A DNA stretch of 63,720 nucleotides, filler included, from Octopus bimaculoides (Eukaryota), in assembly GCF_001194135.2 (NCBI RefSeq). It is 3 parts of 3 records of this genome, joined end to end, with 100 filler letters (N's around TTAATTAATTAA, not from the genome) between each part and the next. Parts side by side here need not be neighbours in the genome. Positions count along the whole stretch, not along the records: positions 1 to 27,616 come from NC_068982.1; 2 more parts are not named here. One strand, written 5' to 3'. Positions within the stretch are counted from its first letter, which is position 1; each line of letters starts with the position of its first letter. The notes beneath the pieces were generated by a model, which saw only the letters and a program-made list of their open reading frames with translations, was not told the DNA's origin and did no database searches. A program made the position numbers and the translations under genes. Positions 2,581 through 22,994 of this stretch are shown piece by piece.

Positions 2581-4130
2581 GCGAGCTTATCCCAAACGGG
2601 CAAGGCACCTCTGTAACATTGCCAGGTTAAGGACTTTTGGAAGTTGTCCAATGTTCTCAACCCGAATGTACAGTAAAACAGACTGTCCAGTTGAATAAAC
2701 CCGAGACCTAAAGTCGCCCCCAGGCCATCGTCGCATTCAGACTCTACCAACCCACTACATAATATCTGTGTGGAACCCCCACCGCTGGCGTTGCACGGGC
2801 GCCGGAATAGTAAAAGGACCTTACGGCACTCTTTATGCCATACACTCGATCTCGTTCTACGAGAACACCAAGCTTCCTGTTCGCAAAAACTTTTGAACTC
2901 GGGTCGAACATTTGTCTGGCTAGCAGAGACCACACCCGTTCACTATCCAGGAGAATCCAGAGGTGCCTCAACCTCAACGCATGCCTGCGCATCATTAACC
3001 AAGGCATCTCTAAACCTCCCTTTAAAGACTTTTGACAGCAGACAGCGTTTCACAAGTGGCGACCTGCCCTTCCACAAACAACGAAGGAGCTGTCTCTCNN
3101 NNNNNNNNNNNNNNNNNNNNNNNNNNNNNNNNNNNNNNNNNNNNNNNNNNNNNNNNNNNNNNNNNNNNNNNNNNNNNNNNNNNNNNNNNNNNNNNNNNNN
3201 NNNNNNNNNNNNNNNNNNNNNNNNNNNNNNNNNNNNNNNNNNNNNNNNNNNNNNNNNNNNNNNNNNNNNNNNNNNNNNNNNNNNNNNNNNNNNNNNNNNN
3301 NNNNNNNNNNNNNNNNNNNNNNNNNNNNNNNNNNNNNNNNNNNNNNNNNNNNNNNNNNNNNNNNNNNNNNNNNNNNNNNNNNNNNNNNNNNNNNNNNNNN
3401 NNNNNNNNNNNNNNNNNNNNNNNNNNNNNNNNNNNNNNNNNNNNNNNNNNNNNNNNNNNNNNNNNNNNNNNNNNNNNNNNNNNNNNNNNNNNNNNNNNNN
3501 NNNNNNNNNNNNNNNNNNNNNNNNNNNNNNNNNNNNNNNNNNNNNNNNNNNNNNNNNNNNNNNNNNNNNNNNNNNNNNNNNNNTGATCGATGCGATAAAC
3601 ACATTGGCAAACCTCCACCCTCTCTTTCAAGGATAGCGACCGCCAAGACCAGGCCTTGACTACTGCAGCCACCCTGCTCAATACCTCCGTCCGTCCAGTT
3701 CTCTATCTGGATGCCTGGTCCGAACCAAACTCCCAGCAACTTAACCGGTCCCTCCGTCCTGCACCAACAACGCTGTCTGAAGGCATCGACTTGCTAACTC
3801 AGGTGCCGAACTGCAAGCCGACCGACTTTTCCCGGTTAATCTTTGCTCCTGTCACCTCCTCGTAAGTCTCAATAGTCTTACCCACTTCATATAGGCGTGC
3901 TACTGAGGTTACGCTGATAGTGATATCATCCGCGTAAGCCGTAACAAACCCCTCTAGACCTGGTTCTCTCGGGATGCTACTTAACCTTCGCAGTAGGGGC
4001 TCGAGAGCCACCACATACAAAAGTGGTGAGAGCGGACATCCTTGACGAAACGACCGTTTGATGCAGACCGGCTTCGAAAGGAAACCACTCACTCGAACTA
4101 TCGAGTCAATGTTGTGGCACGACGCACTAA
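2581..4130 (-). mobile_element. decayed L1/Tx1-clade non-LTR retrotransposon (RT and C-terminal region)
   Basis: Minus-strand translation RSFRQGCPLSPLLYVVALEPL, AYADDIT, TGAKINREKS, then VAAVVKAWSWRSLSLK and WQCYRGALPV; frameshifted and split by a gap. Confidence 0.9.
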
Positions 4131-4132
4131 TG

Positions 4133-4370
4133 TTTCTTATTTCTTTATTGCGCACAAGGGGCTAAACATAGAGGGGACAAACAAGGACAGACAAAGGGGA
4201 TTAAGTCGTTTACACCGACCGCCAGTGCGTAACTGGTACTTATTTAATCAACCTCGAAAGGATGAAAGGCTAAGTCGACTTCGGCTGAATTTGAACTCAG
4301 AACGTAGCGGCAGACGAAATATCGCTAAGCATTTTGCCCGGCGTGCTAACGTTTCTGTCAGCTCACCGCC
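4133..4370 (-). mobile_element. full-length family B (OR-type) SINE, tgtctgtccttgtttgtcccc tail
   Basis: ggcggtgagctgacagaaacgttagcacgccggg head with A/B-box-like motifs, core, and aataaagaaataagaa tail. Confidence 0.9.
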
Positions 4371-7860: not shown

Positions 7861-7927
7861 AGCCCAAAGCAATATCCACAGATATTGCTTTGTGCTGAGT
7901 GGAGATGCTAAACTCCTCTGTTCGAAT
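7861..7927 (+). repeat. detached 5' fragment of the ~350-bp ribozyme repeat, starting at the cleavage site with a 16-bp fold-back
   Basis: 7877-7927 aligns to post-cleavage sequence of units at 8986 and 9343; 7861-7876 is the reverse complement of 7881-7896 (15/16). Confidence 0.8.
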
Positions 7928-8076
7928 TGTTCTAATCCCCAGTTTTGATAAGTAATATTTCCGCACAAAATGTTTTCCAGTATTTTTTTTGTTTTTTTTT
8001 GTTTTTCAGCTCTTATGCATACAACATTTACATACTATTTTTGAGAACTGAAAGAGTCAGATGTTCTTTAAGAGGA

Positions 8077-8297
8077 AGGCAGAAACGTTAGCACGTCGGG
8101 CGAAATGTATAGCGGTATTTCGTCTGGCGTTACGTTCTGAGTTCAAATTCCGCCGAGGTCGACTTTGCCTTTCCTCCTTTCGGGGTCGATAAATTAAGTA
8201 CCAGTTACGCACTGGGGTCGATGTAATAGACTTAACCCCTTTGTCTGTCCTTGTTTGTCCCCTCTGTATTTAGCCCCTTATGGGCAATAAAGAAGTA
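8077..8297 (+). mobile_element. family B (OR-type) SINE with 18-bp target-site duplication
   Basis: agatgttctttaagagga at 8059-8076 and 8298-8315; gagttcaaattcc B-box-like motif; core and tail intact. Confidence 0.92.
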
Positions 8298-8354
8298 AGA
8301 TGTTCTTTAAGAGGACACTCCTTTGTTTATGATCCTATTTACACCCCATATATA

Positions 8355-8463: not shown

Positions 8464-8511
<48 letters not shown>

Positions 8512-8700
8512 TATCTTTTTATTTGGTTCAGTCATCTGACTGCAGCCATGCTGAGGTTTTTTCAGTCGAAGGAATCGATCCCAGGTCTTATTCTTTGTAA
8601 GCCTAATACTTATTCTGTCGGATAGTTTTACCGAAACGTTAGTTTACGCACCTACACACCTACTTCGATTCTCAAGCGGTGGTGGAGGGACAAACACAGG
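8355..8700 (-). mobile_element. family A SINE 3' half with duplicated tail and internal microsatellites
   Basis: tttcagtcatttgattgtggccat and ttcagtcatctgactgcagccatgctg...cttattctttgtaagcctaatacttattc match family A. Confidence 0.75.
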
Positions 8701-8947
8701 CACAGATAGTGTGTCGTATAGCCAGCTAGAGACGATATTTCCTGGGGGTAAATAGCAGTAACATTCGTCCCAACCTGTTGGCAAATAATCTTTAGTTTAG
8801 AGTGCTGTTACTGAATATCTCTCAATGAGAGATTTAGAAATAGTGATGCGTCTATTTATTAGCTCAGTGTCTGTGTGTCACTTTGAAAATTAGATATATA
8901 TTTTAGAACAGGATTTTAGCAGCGCCATCTCTAGCCAAACAGTTATT

Positions 8948-8990
8948 CTGTGCCGAGGAATAGAAATAACCCCAAAACCGCGGTCCACAG
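8948..8990 (+). ncRNA. type I hammerhead ribozyme, mutated copy 1 (core partly deleted)
   Basis: Stem I ctgtg/cacag; core reduced to c-cga-g; aaaac (GAAAC mutated); stem III AC-CGCG-GT; GTC cleavage triplet at 8983-8985. Confidence 0.6.
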
Positions 8991-9302
8991 ACATAGCTTT
9001 GTGCTAAGTGAAGGTGCGAAACTACTCTGTTCGAAAATATAAGGACACAGATAGTGTAGCGTAAAGCCAGATGGAGACGATGTTTCCTGGGGTTAAATAG
9101 CAGTAACATTCGTCCCAACAGGACTGCCACATTATGTTGACAAATAATCTTTACTTTAGAGTACTGTTACTGAATGTCTCTTGTTGAGTGATTTAGAAAT
9201 AATAATGTTTCTATTTATTAGTTCAGTGTCTGTGTGTTATTTTAAAAATTATATATATTTTAGAGCAGAATTTTAGCAGCACCATCTGTAGCCAAGCAGT
9301 TA

Positions 9303-9347
9303 TTCTCTGATGAGGAAGGGAAATAACCCAGAAACAACGGTCCACAG
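9303..9347 (+). ncRNA. type I hammerhead ribozyme, mutated copy 2 (core intact, stem I damaged)
   Basis: CTGATGA 9307-9313, stem II ggg-aaataa-ccc, GAAAC 9331-9335, loop aacg, GTC 9340-9342, then cacag. Confidence 0.7.
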
Positions 9348-9534
9348 ATATTGCTTTATGCTGAGTGAAGATGTTAAACTCCTCTGTTTAAAAATATAAG
9401 GGCATATAATGTGCCGTATAGCCAGCTAGAGACGATGTTTCCTGGGGTTAAATAACAGCAACATTCGTCCCATCCGGGACTGCCACATTATGTTGGCAAA
9501 TAATCGTTACTACATATATATGTGTGTATGTGTT

Positions 9535-9566
<32 letters not shown>

Positions 9567-10238
9567 ACNNNNNNNNNNNNNNNNNNNNNNNNNNNNNNNN
9601 NNNNNNNNNNNNNNNNNNNNNNNNNNNNNNNNNNNNNNNNNNNNNNNNNNNNNNNNNNNNNNNNNNNNNNNNNNNNNNNNNNNNNNNNNNNNNNNNNNNN
9701 NNNNNNNNNNNNNNNNNNNNNNNNNNNNNNNNNNNNNNNNNNNNNNNNNNNNNNNNNNNNNNNNNNNNNNNNNNNNNNNNNNNNNNNNNNNNNNNNNNNN
9801 NNNNNNNNNNNNNNNNNNNNNNNNNNNNNNNNNNNNNNNNNNNNNNNNNNNNNNNNNNNNNNNNNNNNNNNNNNNNNNNNNNNNNNNNNNNNNNNNNNNN
9901 NNNNNNNNNNNNNNNNNNNNNNNNNNNNNNNNNNNNNNNNNNNNNNNNNNNNNNNNNNNNNNNNNNNNNNNNNNNNNNNNNNNNNNNNNNNNNNNNNNNN
10001 NNNNNNNNNNNNNNNNNNNNNNNNNNNNNNNNNNNNNNNNNNNNNNNNNNNNNNNNNNNNNNNNNNNNNNNNNNNNNNNNNNNNNNNNNNNNNNNNNNNN
10101 NNNNNNNNNNNNNAAGGGAGGTAAGTAGTTCTGGATCTGGTGCAATTAGGGTAGATATAGATCAGTAATGTGAATGGTGTATGGGATGTATGGGGGTTAG
10201 TGATATTAATTTAAAGGTTAGTAGTGTTCTGTATTATG

Positions 10239-13751: not shown

Positions 13752-14125
13752 TTTCTTTTTTGATGTGTTTTTGGAGTAAGGCTATGGTCAGGCACCACCT
13801 TGAAGGGTTTAGTCAAACAAATCGATCCCAGTACATTTTTTAAAGTCTAGTACTTATTCTATCGGTTTCTTTTGCCGAACCGTTAGGTTACGGGGGCGTA
13901 AACAGACCGACACCAGTTGTCAAACGGTGTCGGGTAAAGAACACAAATACGAAGACACACACACACACTCACACATACACACAAATATACGAGAGGCTTC
14001 ATTCAGTTTCTGTCTACCAAATTCACTAACAGGCTATAGCATATGACACTTGTTGAAGGTGACACGCAGTGGGACTGAACCCAGAACCATGCAGTTGGGA
14101 AGCAACCACACAGCCACGCCCACGC
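13752..14125 (-). mobile_element. family A tRNA-derived SINE, near full length, diverged
   Basis: Head gcgtggctgtgtggttgcttcccaactgcatggttctgggttcagtcccactgcgtg on the minus strand, CA-rich middle, 3' body. Confidence 0.85.
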
Positions 14126-16227: not shown

Positions 16228-18324
16228 CAGTGGTTCTCAACCTCTTTCACCTACGGGCTCACTTTTTACGATCAAAGAATCCTAGGCNNNNNNNNNNACC
16301 TGCAAGCAAAAAAAAAAGAAAATCTAAAAATGGAAGAAAAGTATATTTACATTTTTATTTACAAGAAATGAAGAATCAATTTTATGGCTATATTGCAGTT
16401 GATGTTTTTCAGTTAGGTTATCAATTTCAAGTTCAAAAGATTGGTTCAAATTGAGACACAAATCTCCTCTTTCGCAATTTGAAGAACACACCGGTTTTTC
16501 TTTAATTTTTTCTTATTTTTTGTTTTTGTGAATATGTCGCTCACTGCGGAAAATCCAGCTTTAACTAACCAGGATATTGGAAAGCAGAGGAGGAACGGGA
16601 TTGCTTCATGAAAAAGTGTTGGAAATGTTGTCTTGGTAGTATTTTTTTGCCAAATAACTGTATTACCGAGAAGGTTTACGAGTAGGAAGGCAATCTATGT
16701 TTCCAATTAACCTAGGAACGAAAAATCAAATTGAAGCCTGGTTATTGTGAAGGTCGTTGCACTTAAATGATCATAGAACATATAAGTTTGCAAGCGATGC
16801 AAAGTAGAACTACTGAAGTGTTTTGGGAGATTATGGATATTGGCTGCAACATATAGTTGATTTTTAAGCATATTTTATTCACTCTTATTTTCATATATAA
16901 CATATAAACATGCACATCTTTTGGAACATTATCATTTTATAAGATTTTGCAGGCAAATTTTTTAAATTAACATTTATTTACATGAAAGAAAATTTCCGGA
17001 GACATAACACGTGTTGGAAGGAGGTACAGAATACGCACACCATCCGTTTTCGGCGTAACCCTAACTCCTAACTCTAACCCTAACCCTAACCCTGACACCT
17101 AAACTCCGGGTGTACATATTCTTTACCCTCACCCACGTATTGTGCTAAAAATAATAGCTAAATATGTTTTTTTTTTTATAAATCTTTTCAATTAACATAA
17201 ACATTTATTTACATGGAAAAATTTACCGGAAATATAACACGTGTTGTGCTAAAATTAACAGCTAAGTAAGATTTTTTGGATAAATCTTTTAAATTAACAT
17301 AATACGTATTGTGCTAAAAATAACAGCTAGATAAGATTTTTTGGATAAATCTTTTAAATTTACATAAACATTTATTTACCTGAAAGAAAATTACCGGGGA
17401 CATATCACGTGTTTGGTTACCGTTGCAGGTAGGCAGTTGAAATAAATAAATAGACAAAATCCTTTCACTTTTATAAAAAGTATGGAAGACCCTACAAACC
17501 CCAAACAACTATGCCCATTTGCNNNNNNNNNNGAAGACCCTACAAACCCCAAACAACTATGCCCATTTGCGTCCATTTACGCGAGAGCTCTGGGCAAAAT
17601 GTTATAGTGCACGACCATCCATGGGACATAAGTAATGCGTGTGTAAAGTTTGGTGAAAATAGGTTGAGAATTGTGGAAATGTATGCGTTAGTCATTATAC
17701 ACACACATACTGTGATTTATATATACTAGATTAAAGCAGAATACTTACCAAACAAATATTTGTTCGACTGATCCATTAGATAAGAGCTAAAAATATTGAC
17801 TCTGTTTTTGATATCAATAGATACATATTTATATCACTACAAACGTGCTGCATTGGCGATTGTAGCAGATAGGCTCAAACTTGTCATGGGTGCAGCTAGG
17901 AAATACATATAACAGGTGCGCTGTCATAAAGATGCTTGCATTCACGCGAGACCCGCCAATCCACTCCACAATTGATTTGGTCAAACTGCACATCATGTGC
18001 TTACTGTAGTGGTGTAATCTGAGAAAAATATTGAGCCAAGACCAGCGTTGTCAAAGTTGTTACGTTTGTAAGAACTTTGACAAAATTTATGCGTTGTTAC
18101 GTTATTTGTTACGTTTTGGAATTTTATTTGTTACGTTTTGGAATTTTATTTGTTACGTTGGTCAAGGCTACAAATTGAATACTAAAAACAGCTTGTTTCC
18201 AATCCACAAAAATTGCAAGGGCCTCTCAAAATTTTCTCAGGCACTCTTAAAATTTTCCCAGGCCCACTCAAAATTTTCCCAGGCCCACTCAAAATGTTCC
18301 CAGGCCCAAAGTTGAGAACCACGC
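16228..18324. mobile_element. non-autonomous hAT (Charlie-like) DNA transposon with nested insertions
   Basis: TIR cagtggttctcaac / gttgagaaccacgc; 8-bp flanks atctaaag / acctcaag (6/8, resembling the nTCTAGAn preference); 21-bp subterminal repeats aaaattttcccaggcccactc x4 at about 18227-18308; ttgttacgtt repeats at 18058-18160. Confidence 0.8.
17533..17731 (+). mobile_element. Helitron/HINE-like 3' end nested in the hAT element
   Basis: gtgtaaagtttggtgaaaataggttgag...acacacatac...tttatatatactagat resembles non-autonomous rolling-circle element ends. Confidence 0.45.
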
Positions 18325-21519: not shown

Positions 21520-21968
21520 TATTCTTTTATTCCTTTACTTGTTTCAGTCATTTTGACTGTGGCCATGCTGGAGCACCGCCTTTTAGTCGAAGAAATCGGC
21601 CCCTGGACTTATTCTTTGTAAGCCTGGTATTTATTCTATCGGTTTTCTTTTGCCCAACGGCTAAGTTACGGGGACGTAAACACATCAACATCGGTTATAA
21701 ATTGATGGTGGAGGTCTAACACAGATACAGACACACAAATATATACATACAGATACACACACACACACACTCTCATACATACACACAGGCGCGCGCGCAG
21801 ACACAGACATATATACGATGGACTTCTTTCAGTTTCTGTCTACCAAATTCACTCACAAGTCTTTGGTCGGCCCGAGCCTACAGTAGAAGACACTTGCTGA
21901 AGGTGCCACGCTGTAGGACTGAACCCGGTACCATGTGGTTGTAAGCAAGCTTCTTACCTCACAACCAT
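21520..21968 (-). mobile_element. family A tRNA-derived SINE, full length
   Basis: tRNA-like head, caccttcagcaagtgtcttct motif, CA microsatellite middle, gcggtgctccagcatggccacagtc 3' end. Confidence 0.88.
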
Positions 21969-22624: not shown

Positions 22625-22994
22625 ACTCTTTTACACTTTTACATGTTTCAGTCATTTGACTGCAGCCATGCTAGAGCACCGCCTTTAGTCGAGCAAATCG
22701 ACCCCAGGACTTATTCTTTGTAAGCCCAGTACTTATTCTATCGGTCCCTTTTGCTGAACCGCTAAGTAACTGGGACGTAAACACACCAGCATCGGTTGTC
22801 AAGCGATGTTGGGGCGAGACAAACATAGACACGCAAACACATACACACACATACATACATATATATACATATATACGACGGGCTTTTTTCAGTTTCCGTC
22901 TACCGAATCCAGTCACAAGGCTTTGGTCGGCCCGAGGCTATAGCAGAAAATACTTGCCCAAGGTGCCACGCAGTGGGACCTAACCTGGAACCAT
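22625..22994 (-). mobile_element. family A SINE, head runs into gap
   Basis: High similarity to 41788-42175. Confidence 0.88.

What the first reader, a model, noticed from the sequence alone, without database searches (positions are those of the whole stretch)
8701..9510. Candidate non-LTR retrozyme: ~350-bp tandem units each carrying a type I hammerhead ribozyme
Seen: units start at 8701, 9046 and 9403. At the same position in both complete units sits a hammerhead-like motif. Copy 1 has an intact stem I (ctgtg/cacag) and palindromic stem III (ACCGCGGT) but a 3-nt core deletion and a GAAA mutation. Copy 2 has intact CTGATGA and GAAAC but has lost gtg from stem I. The lesions are largely complementary, so the consensus ctgtg-CTGAyGA-g gaaggg aaataa ccc c-GAAAC-cgcg-GTC-cacag is a complete type I hammerhead. 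The predicted cleavage sites (after 8985 and 9342) define a 357-nt monomer, and the unit has internal complementarity (cagtaaca/tgttactg; aaatag/ctattt). Established: tandem repeats with type I hammerheads and a short palindromic stem III occur in newt satellite 2, schistosome and cricket satellites, and metazoan non-LTR retrozymes, which yield monomeric and circular RNAs. Inference: this is a cephalopod retrozyme family whose active copies lie elsewhere in the genome.
Basis: partly seen in the sequence, partly recalled or inferred. Interest (0 to 1): 0.9.

Follow-up and report, generated by a model that had tools for sequence, protein, structure and literature searches.

The report
Decayed hammerhead-ribozyme tandem repeat in octopus
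A 357-base sequence repeated head-to-tail about 2.25 times carries, in each full copy, the mutated remains of a self-cutting hammerhead RNA, so it is most likely a dead copy of a known kind of small mobile element (a non-LTR retrozyme) not yet described in octopuses.

Summary
The tandem repeat is real: units at 8701, 9046 and 9403, period 357, about 85% identity, 2.25 units, ending in a microsatellite before an assembly gap. A hammerhead-like motif sits at the same place in both full units. The two motifs align without gaps, so the two "complementary 3-nt deletions" are not observed. A covariance model built from four validated retrozyme hammerheads picked a different register. In it, helix I (UCUGUG/CACAGA) abuts the core, and the core box is CCGAGGA in copy 1 and AUGAGGA in copy 2, each one substitution from CUGAGGA. 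With substitutions only, the pair reconstructs a full type I hammerhead. Copy 2 is the only near-hammerhead in the window (shuffled windows: 5 of 400). Both copies are dead: C3A in copy 2, U4C and G12A in copy 1. No Rfam hit, no covariation (n=2), no flanking Penelope ORF, no target-site duplication. Other genomic copies could not be reached with these tools. Verdict: a fossil retrozyme-type array, a new member of a known kind, of moderate interest.

The parts
8701..9045 (+). Tandem unit 1 (345 nt; lacks about 12 nt present in units 2 and 3)
9046..9402 (+). Tandem unit 2 (357 nt, full length)
9403..9511 (+). Tandem unit 3, partial (first ~105 nt of the unit); the array ends here in a microsatellite (9512-9568) before the N gap at 9569-10113
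8947..8991 (+). Hammerhead relic, copy 1 (register B): helix I 5' strand 8947-8952 UCUGUG; core box 8953-8959 CCGAGGA (U4C); helix II 5' strand 8960-8963 AUAG (broken); loop 2 8964-8969 AAAUAA; helix II 3' strand 8970-8973 CCCC; 8974-8976 AAA (G12A); helix III 8977-8984 AC-CGCG-GU (palindromic); C17 at 8985; helix I 3' strand 8986-8991 CACAGA (6/6 pairs)
9304..9348 (+). Hammerhead relic, copy 2 (register B): helix I 5' strand 9304-9309 UCUCUG (5/6 pairs, C.C at 9307/9345); core box 9310-9316 AUGAGGA (C3A); helix II 5' strand 9317-9320 AGGG; loop 2 9321-9326 AAAUAA; helix II 3' strand 9327-9330 CCCA (GGG/CCC paired, A.A at its base); G12-A14 9331-9333 GAA; helix III 9334-9341 AC-AACG-GU; C17 at 9342; helix I 3' strand 9343-9348 CACAGA
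9307..9313 (+). In register B it overlaps helix I and the core, and arises from two substitutions (G to C at 9307, C to A at 9310)
8986..9342 (+). Putative 357-nt monomer between the two predicted cleavage sites (after C8985 and after C9342); GC 36%
8933..9005 (+). Long imperfect hairpin (~21 bp in copy 1) whose arms flank the hammerhead core, in effect an extended helix I
7875..7926 (+). Stray 52-nt partial copy of the unit (94% identical to unit 2, 87% to unit 1), beginning 2 nt 5' of the predicted cleavage site
8510..8699 (+). Left flank: body of a SINE-like repeat. In its other copies the body is followed by an AC/AT microsatellite, so the array sits at or in that microsatellite

Best explanation
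This is a fossil, 2.25-unit array of a 357-nt non-coding tandem repeat whose ancestor carried a type I hammerhead ribozyme. That makes it a decayed copy of a metazoan non-LTR retrozyme-type element in an octopus-like genome. Shown here: the tandem structure; a hammerhead-shaped motif at the same position in both full units; different inactivating substitutions in each unit; and the fact that taking the hammerhead-compatible base at the sites where the units differ restores a complete ribozyme without any insertion or deletion. The restored motif reads UCUGUG / CUGAGGA / A-GGG-AAAUAA-CCC-C / GAAAC / CGCG or AACG / GUC / CACAGA. [quoted passage not shown] A tRNA ligase of the RtcB type would close these into circles. 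The circles would be reverse-transcribed, probably by a Penelope-like element's enzyme, and the multimeric cDNA would be inserted as new tandem arrays. The palindromic helix III of copy 1 (ACCGCGGU) would let two ribozymes pair as a dimer. At this locus none of this can happen any more. Copy 2 has C3A plus a helix I mismatch. Copy 1 has U4C, G12A and a broken helix II. All three core changes hit bases of the conserved catalytic centre.
For: Period-357 tandem repeat, within the 150-450 bp range, and GC of 36%, below the <45-50% limit of the published definition. A covariance model built from four validated retrozyme hammerheads ranks 9304-9348 first in the whole window, on both strands and with filters off (12.3 bits). 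The substitution-only reconstruction of a full hammerhead is matched by 1 of 20000 column shuffles, and by 0 of 20000 when a 6-bp helix I is required. Copy 2 alone is the only near-hammerhead in 25 kb of real sequence, and 5 of 400 shuffled windows contain one. Both lesions of copy 2 (C3 and the helix I G) are intact in copy 1, and all lesions of copy 1 are intact in copy 2, as expected for independent decay from an intact ancestor. In register B 79% of pair cells are standard pairs, against 17-50% when the 3' partners are slid by 1-3 columns. The core matches the published consensus CUGANGA / GAAAY / RUH once the lesions are reverted. The helix III type equals that of mussel Mg353 (GAAAC-GCGC-GUC), and the box CUGAGGA equals that of axolotl Ax330. 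The monomer folds better than shuffles in both polarities. Hammerhead_1 matches and Penelope elements are already annotated in a cephalopod genome.
Against: No extant copy is a complete hammerhead. No Rfam hammerhead family matches at the gathering score, or at E<=10 even on an 81-nt slice. The custom-model score is not significant on its own (E about 0.16). There is no compensatory change in any helix, because every difference breaks a pair. Position 10.1 is A in both units, so even the reconstruction has an A.C or A.A mismatch at the base of helix II. The hammerhead fold of the reconstruction (-7.4 kcal/mol) competes with a more stable alternative (-21.3 kcal/mol). No target-site duplication was found. 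There are only 2.25 units, and only one other fragment of the family in 27.6 kb. The descriptors used for the nulls were fixed after seeing the data. Family copy number, expression and cleavage are untested.
Confidence: 0.68

Rival explanations
1. This is an ordinary local tandem duplication of non-coding, hairpin-rich repeat DNA, and the hammerhead resemblance is coincidental. The reader, and then I, found the best-fitting register among many possibilities.
For: Bare core matches are common, with 4 loci on one strand of this window. Rfam finds nothing. The custom model gives E of about 0.16. There is no covariation. Helix II is imperfect even after reconstruction. The descriptors were set post hoc. 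The scan that produced this finding looked at many windows.
Against: Null frequencies are low even for the whole window: 5/400 for copy 2 alone and 1/20000 for the pair. Each copy supplies exactly the bases the other lacks. The motif lies in the one long-period tandem repeat of the window, which has the size and GC content typical of retrozymes.
Confidence: 0.15
2. The relic is real, but the reader's register is the true one. In that view the ancestral core was CUGAUGA preceded by cugug, helix II was G-(GAA bulge)-GGG/CCC-C, copy 1 lost UGA, and copy 2 lost GUG.
For: Copy 2 has a perfect CUGAUGA (9307-9313) at a workable distance from GAAAC. A reconstruction with a +3 or +2 shift passes a full descriptor, and only 7 of 2400 shuffles do so. 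Position 10.1-11.1 would be the usual G-C pair.
Against: It needs two independent 3-nt deletions a few bases apart plus a substitution, while the copies align without gaps. It leaves a 3-nt bulge inside helix II. It is about 60 times more frequent under the null than register B. The covariance model chose register B.
Confidence: 0.1
3. The repeat is not an independent retrozyme. It is a piece of a Penelope-like element, either its pseudo-LTR (which carries hammerheads and forms partial tandems) or another hammerhead-bearing retroposon, whose coding part has been lost or lies in the assembly gap.
For: PLE pseudo-LTRs carry type I hammerheads in tandem and insert into microsatellites. Animal retrozymes are reported to be related to pLTRs. 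Penelope elements exist in cephalopods. The array abuts microsatellites and an N gap of unknown true size.
Against: There is no ORF of 90 aa or more next to the array. No RT, GIY-YIG or other Pfam domain is found in stop-free segments within 4 kb on either side. The only RT fragment in the window is of the LINE type with an Exo_endo_phos partner, 4.5 kb away. The motif has a 2-bp helix III with a tetraloop and a 6-nt loop 2, unlike the minimal PLE variants that lack helix III.
Confidence: 0.07

Closest known systems
Metazoan non-LTR retrozymes (Cervera & de la Pena 2020, PMC7229834), in particular mussel Mytilus galloprovincialis Mg353
   Same: Non-coding head-to-tail repeats with almost the same monomer size (357 vs 353 nt) and low GC. 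There is one type I hammerhead per unit. Helix III consists of A-U and C-G pairs capped by a palindromic CG-rich tetraloop (octopus copy 1 AC-CGCG-GU, mussel AC-GCGC-GU). The predicted monomer RNA is self-paired. Both hosts are molluscs.
   Different: Both hammerheads here are mutated in the catalytic core. Helix II is GGG/CCC with a mismatch at its base instead of four clean pairs. There is no sequence similarity outside the ribozyme. Only 2.25 units are present. No evidence of expression or of a multi-copy family could be obtained.
Axolotl retrozymes Ax330 / Ax353 and newt satellite 2
   Same: Monomers of about 330-350 nt. Ax330 has the CUGAGGA core box. Helix III is weak and palindromic, which favours cleavage as a dimer. 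Ax353 tolerates a mismatch (U.U) at the base of helix II.
   Different: Those are vertebrate families with about 10^5 copies and demonstrated cleavage and circular RNAs. Their helix I and loop sequences are unrelated to this one.
Minimal hammerheads of Penelope-like elements and Terminons
   Same: Type I topology, occurrence in tandem or partial-tandem repeats, and association with microsatellite targets.
   Different: PLE variants lack helix III or its loop and sit in pseudo-LTRs next to an RT/GIY-YIG ORF. Here helix III and loop 2 are present and no such ORF is nearby.
Rfam Hammerhead_1 (RF00163) matches annotated in the giant squid genome (PMC6962438)
   Same: Type I hammerheads in a cephalopod genome.
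   Different: Those 235 loci pass the Rfam gathering score, and their genomic organisation was not described. This locus does not pass, and it is in an octopus-like genome.

Membership tests
Metazoan non-LTR retrozyme | Head-to-tail tandem repeats with a monomer of about 150-450 bp | tested here: met
   Period 357, 2.1-2.25 copies; definition
Metazoan non-LTR retrozyme | Low GC content (<45-50%) | tested here: met
   Monomer GC 36%; 33-40% in sliding windows
Metazoan non-LTR retrozyme | [quoted passage not shown] | tested here: not met
   Neither unit passes a full descriptor. Copy 2 has C3A and a helix I mismatch. Copy 1 has U4C, G12A and a broken helix II. Only a reconstruction from both copies passes.
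Metazoan non-LTR retrozyme | Non-coding; no LTR, PBS or PPT and no protein genes | tested here: met
   The longest ORF is 75 aa, and no homologue was found in any of six frames. The protein collection hardly covers cephalopod ORFs, so the homology part of this test is weak.
Metazoan non-LTR retrozyme | Monomer RNA predicted to be stable and highly self-paired | tested here: inconclusive
   z = -2.8 and -2.45 (linear), -2.3 and -3.0 (circular), about 60% paired. This is better than shuffles but not extreme.
Metazoan non-LTR retrozyme | Multi-copy, dispersed family in the genome | not testable with these tools
   Only one extra 52-nt fragment in the window. No collection with cephalopod genomic DNA was reachable.
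Metazoan non-LTR retrozyme | Expressed as linear and circular monomer RNAs | not testable with these tools
   Needs RNA-seq junction reads, or northern blots with RNase R treatment
Metazoan non-LTR retrozyme | Target-site duplications flanking the array (when present) | tested here: inconclusive
   No direct repeat of 6 nt or more between the flanks. The right flank is a microsatellite followed by an N gap.
Hammerhead ribozyme, type I | Conserved catalytic core CUGANGA / GAAA(Y) / (R)UH | tested here: not met
Register B: copy 1 CCGAGGA / AAAAC / GUC; copy 2 AUGAGGA / GAAAC / GUC.
Hammerhead ribozyme, type I | Three helices around the core, with helix I open and helices II and III closed by loops | tested here: met
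   Helix I 6/6 and 5/6 pairs, helix III 2/2 in both copies, helix II 3/4 in copy 2 and 1/4 in copy 1. Overall 79% of cells are paired, against 17-50% in slid controls.
Hammerhead ribozyme, type I | Match to Rfam hammerhead covariance models at the gathering score | tested here: not met
   No match at gathering, nor at E<=10 on 1 kb or 81 nt. The custom model from 4 validated members gives 12.3 bits, E about 0.16.
Hammerhead ribozyme, type I | Covariation supporting the helices | tested here: inconclusive
   Zero compensatory changes, but only two sequences were available
Hammerhead ribozyme, type I | Mg2+-dependent self-cleavage 3' of H17 | not testable with these tools
   Experiment needed. 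The extant copies are predicted to be inactive.
Penelope-like element pseudo-LTR | Adjacent ORF with RT and GIY-YIG endonuclease | tested here: not met
   No ORF of 90 aa or more next to the array, and no Pfam domain in stop-free segments within 4 kb on either side. Caveat: the N gap at 9569-10113.
Penelope-like element pseudo-LTR | Minimal hammerhead lacking helix III and loop-loop contacts | tested here: not met
   Helix III of 2 bp with a tetraloop, and a 6-nt loop 2, are present

The most novel reading that the evidence does not exclude
The octopus genome harbours a live family of 357-nt type I hammerhead retrozymes, of which this locus is one dead member. These would produce abundant small circular RNAs, would be the first retrozymes described in cephalopods, and might be mobilised by cephalopod Penelope-like elements.
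Probability: 0.35. Interest if true: 0.5.

Novelty: new member of a known kind. Interest (0 to 1): 0.38.

Why it matters
If the family is confirmed genome-wide, it would extend non-LTR retrozymes, with their ribozyme-made circular RNAs, to cephalopods. That lineage has unusual RNA biology and very repeat-rich genomes. It would also give a second molluscan family to compare with the mussel one. The locus itself is a fossil and does nothing today. Methodologically, it shows that a ribozyme relic missed by Rfam thresholds can be recovered by reading paralogous tandem units against each other. It also shows that an 'intact' core box can be a by-product of decay in a different register.

Tried and rejected
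(1) Rfam at the gathering score on the whole piece, and at E<=10 on 1 kb and on 81 nt, gave no hammerhead or other ribozyme family. (2) I tried to fish for other family copies through the protein index. The 75-aa ORF over the ribozyme region gave nothing, and neither did a six-frame concatenate of the array. A positive control with flanking SINE and LINE sequence returned only annotated proteins, one of them from Octopus bimaculoides. These negatives therefore say nothing about copy number. (3) A metagenome scan with a conserved 19-base pattern returned 16 contigs of one unrelated multi-copy repeat that share only the seed. A scan of bacterial and archaeal genomes returned nothing. (4) Two long ENA contigs carrying related LINE RTs are not cephalopod DNA and lack the repeat. 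The window's own RT ORF is not on record in the assembly index. (5) I considered that the stray fragment at 7875-7926 is a copy from which the ~38-nt ribozyme core is deleted, and dropped the idea because the upstream homology is not significant (534/5000). (7) A Penelope pLTR origin was tested and found no support, with no RT or GIY-YIG nearby. (8) No similarity to the bodies of the mussel or coral retrozymes was found. (9) No tRNA-like content was found in the unit. (10) No target-site duplication was found.

Full report
OBSERVATION. The piece contains one long-period tandem repeat. TRF reports 8776-9511, period 357, 2.1 copies, 84% matches. Alignment and BLAST place unit 1 at 8701-9045 (345 nt, with a ~12-nt deletion), unit 2 at 9046-9402 (357 nt), and a partial unit 3 from 9403 to about 9505-9511. 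Gap-free identity between units 1 and 2 is 343/401 = 85.5%. The array ends in a microsatellite (9512-9568) before the N gap at 9569-10113, so the gap does not cut it.

WHAT DID NOT HOLD. The two hammerhead-like segments (8943-8998 and 9300-9355) align base for base without a gap. The "3-nt core deletion" in copy 1 and the "lost gtg" in copy 2 are therefore an interpretation, not an observation. Bare core matches of this kind occur at four places on the + strand of this window alone. No Rfam hammerhead family, nor any other ribozyme family, matches at the gathering score. None matches at E<=10 on 1 kb or on the 81-nt slice around copy 2.

THE TURN. I took four experimentally validated retrozyme hammerheads from the supplement of PMC7229834 (coral Amil224, mussel Mg353, axolotl Ax353 and Ax330). 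I aligned them, built a covariance model with the canonical type I topology, and searched the whole piece on both strands with filters off. The best hit in the window is 9304-9348 (+), at 12.3 bits and E about 0.16. That is first in rank but not significant on its own, and copy 1 is not listed at E<=10.

In this register B, helix I is UCUCUG (9304-9309) with CACAGA (9343-9348), directly against the core. The core box is AUGAGGA (9310-9316). Helix II is A-GGG / CCC-A around loop AAAUAA. Then come GAA, helix III AC-AACG-GU, and C17 at 9342. Read the same way, copy 1 is UCUGUG (8947-8952), CCGAGGA (8953-8959), AUAG / CCCC, AAA, AC-CGCG-GU, C8985, CACAGA (8986-8991).

Each copy's core box is therefore one substitution from CUGAGGA, a box that also occurs in the validated Ax330 ribozyme. 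The lesions are C3A in copy 2 and U4C in copy 1. The remaining lesions are G12A and two helix II changes in copy 1, and one helix I mismatch in copy 2. Every lesion in one copy is intact in the other. No insertion or deletion is needed. The "intact CUGAUGA" of copy 2 results from two substitutions, G to C at 9307 and C to A at 9310. The predicted cleavage sites (after 8985 and 9342) and the 357-nt monomer are the same in both registers.

IS IT CHANCE? I ran three nulls. A full hammerhead is reconstructable from the two aligned units only with free choice of base plus a +3 or +2 register shift. Column shuffles of the alignment reach this in 7 of 2400 cases. (b) Register B. With free choice of base only and no shift, shuffles reach it in 1 of 20000 cases, and in 0 of 20000 if helix I must have 6 pairs. 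(c) Copy 2 on its own. The descriptor allowed at most one core mismatch, at least 5 of 6 helix I pairs, at least 3 helix II pairs, and a 2-bp helix III with U16.1 and H17. Copy 2 is the only such site in the real window on either strand, and 5 of 400 dinucleotide shuffles of the whole window contain one. By proportion that is about 4 in 10,000 for the 0.8-kb array.

I fixed the descriptors after seeing the data, so these figures are optimistic, probably by several-fold. Even so, three things together are hard to get by chance: a near-hammerhead, a paralogue that supplies exactly the missing bases, and a location in the only retrozyme-sized tandem repeat of the window. In register B 79% of pair cells are standard pairs, against 17-50% when the 3' partners are slid by 1-3 columns. 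There is no covariation, because every difference between the copies breaks a pair. This is what neutral decay predicts, and with two sequences it says nothing either way.

ANATOMY AND SURROUNDINGS. The monomer has 36% GC. It folds better than shuffles in both polarities: linear z = -2.8 and -2.45, circular z = -2.3 and -3.0, with about 60% of bases paired. In copy 1 the sequences on either side of the core form a long imperfect hairpin of about 21 bp, in effect an extended helix I. The hammerhead fold of the reconstructed motif is worth -7.4 kcal/mol, against a competing minimum-energy fold of -21.3 kcal/mol. Helix III of copy 1 is an 8-nt palindrome (ACCGCGGU). It is the same type as in mussel Mg353 (ACGCGCGU) and is compatible with the dimeric mode described for weak-helix-III hammerheads. 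Position 10.1 is A in both units, which gives an A.C or A.A mismatch at the base of helix II. A G there would give a clean GGGG/CCCC helix. The validated Ax353 ribozyme also has a mismatch at this place.

The left flank (8510-8699) is the body of a SINE-like repeat that occurs four more times in the window. In the other copies the body is followed by an AC/AT microsatellite. The array therefore sits at or in that microsatellite, and microsatellite follows it on the right. No target-site duplication is detectable. No ORF of 90 aa or more lies next to the array. Stop-free segments within 4 kb on either side hit no Pfam family. The only RT in the window is a LINE-type fragment at 3799-4155. A 52-nt stray copy of the unit lies at 7875-7926 and begins 2 nt 5' of the predicted cleavage site. 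I could not establish what it is.

RELATED SEQUENCES ELSEWHERE. I could not reach any. Two protein-index searches with the array found nothing. A positive control showed that the index holds annotated proteins, including one from Octopus bimaculoides that matches a SINE piece at 75% identity, but not raw ORF calls from cephalopod contigs. That match supports an octopus-like source, and it also means the negative searches are uninformative. DNA pattern scans of metagenomes and of bacterial and archaeal genomes gave only an unrelated repeat or nothing. Two ENA contigs with related LINEs are not cephalopod DNA. There is no similarity to the mussel or coral retrozyme bodies.

LITERATURE. The defining features of metazoan non-LTR retrozymes are in PMC7229834 and PMC7761336. 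[quoted passage not shown] No paper in the library describes retrozymes in cephalopods. The giant squid genome paper does list 235 Rfam Hammerhead_1 matches and Penelope elements. Type I hammerheads in cephalopods are therefore not new in themselves.

MECHANISM. The structure, the lesions and the statistics are shown here. The rest is inferred from the family. Active relatives would be transcribed as multimers. They would self-cleave after GUC into 357-nt monomers, be circularised by a tRNA ligase, and be copied back into DNA as tandem arrays. This locus cannot cleave, because C3, U4 and G12 belong to the conserved catalytic centre (CUGANGA / GAAAY / RUH; the essential role of these bases is established knowledge of the hammerhead). 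From the ~15% divergence between units I infer that the array is old.

VERDICT. The locus is most likely a fossil of a hammerhead-bearing retrozyme-type repeat (confidence about 0.68). It fails the membership test for an active retrozyme and for a complete hammerhead, so I file it as a decayed relative. Novelty: new member of a known kind. Interest is moderate (0.38), because the kind is well known in molluscs and hammerheads are already annotated in a cephalopod. A live octopus family would still be worth describing, and it can be tested with a single genome-wide search.

Noticed in passing
window 7875-7926: A stray 52-nt partial copy of the tandem unit (94% identical to unit 2, 87% to unit 1). 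It begins 2 nt 5' of the predicted hammerhead cleavage site and has its own hairpin AAAGCAATAT-CCACAG-ATATTGCTTT. At sites where units 1 and 2 differ it agrees sometimes with one and sometimes with the other, as a third family member would. Its origin is unresolved.
   Followed up: partly
window 8059-8315: A SINE-like insertion (8077-8297) flanked by an 18-bp target-site duplication AGATGTTCTTTAAGAGGA (8059-8076 and 8298-8315). ARAGORN finds no intact tRNA in it.
   Followed up: partly
window 8510-8699, 22637-22828, 21534-21724, 13808-13892, 829-955: Five copies of a second SINE-like repeat (67-77% identical). Where examined (three copies), the body ends in ...GACAAACAxAG and is followed by an AC/AT microsatellite. 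The hammerhead array sits exactly at that junction in the 8510-8699 copy. A six-frame query made from this repeat and the SINE-like insertion at 8077-8297 matched an annotated Octopus bimaculoides protein (75% identity); which of the two repeats gave the match was not determined.
   Followed up: partly
window 3799-4155 (-): A reverse-transcriptase fragment (Pfam RVT_1, E = 2.5e-13). Its relatives carry Exo_endo_phos + RVT_1, so it is a LINE-type element, not a Penelope-like one.
   Followed up: partly
window 17056-17107: A short interstitial telomere-type repeat, (TAACCC)n, about 7.5 copies.
   Followed up: no
window 17234-17367 and 18102-18308: A 65-bp tandem repeat (2.1 copies, 91%) and 21-22-bp minisatellites. 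These other tandem repeats were not examined.
   Followed up: no
window 8735-8758; loci L001-L016: A 24-nt stretch of unit 1 (ATATTTCCTGGGGGTAAATAGCAG) matches a multi-copy repeat on 16 JGI metagenome contigs (21-24 nt identical, the full 24 nt on two of them). The flanks are unrelated, so this is probably chance amplified by that repeat's copy number.
   Followed up: partly
window 2571-27660 (nine N runs): The piece has many assembly gaps, including 9569-10113 just after the array. It comes from a draft assembly, and the right-hand context of the array is missing.
   Followed up: no
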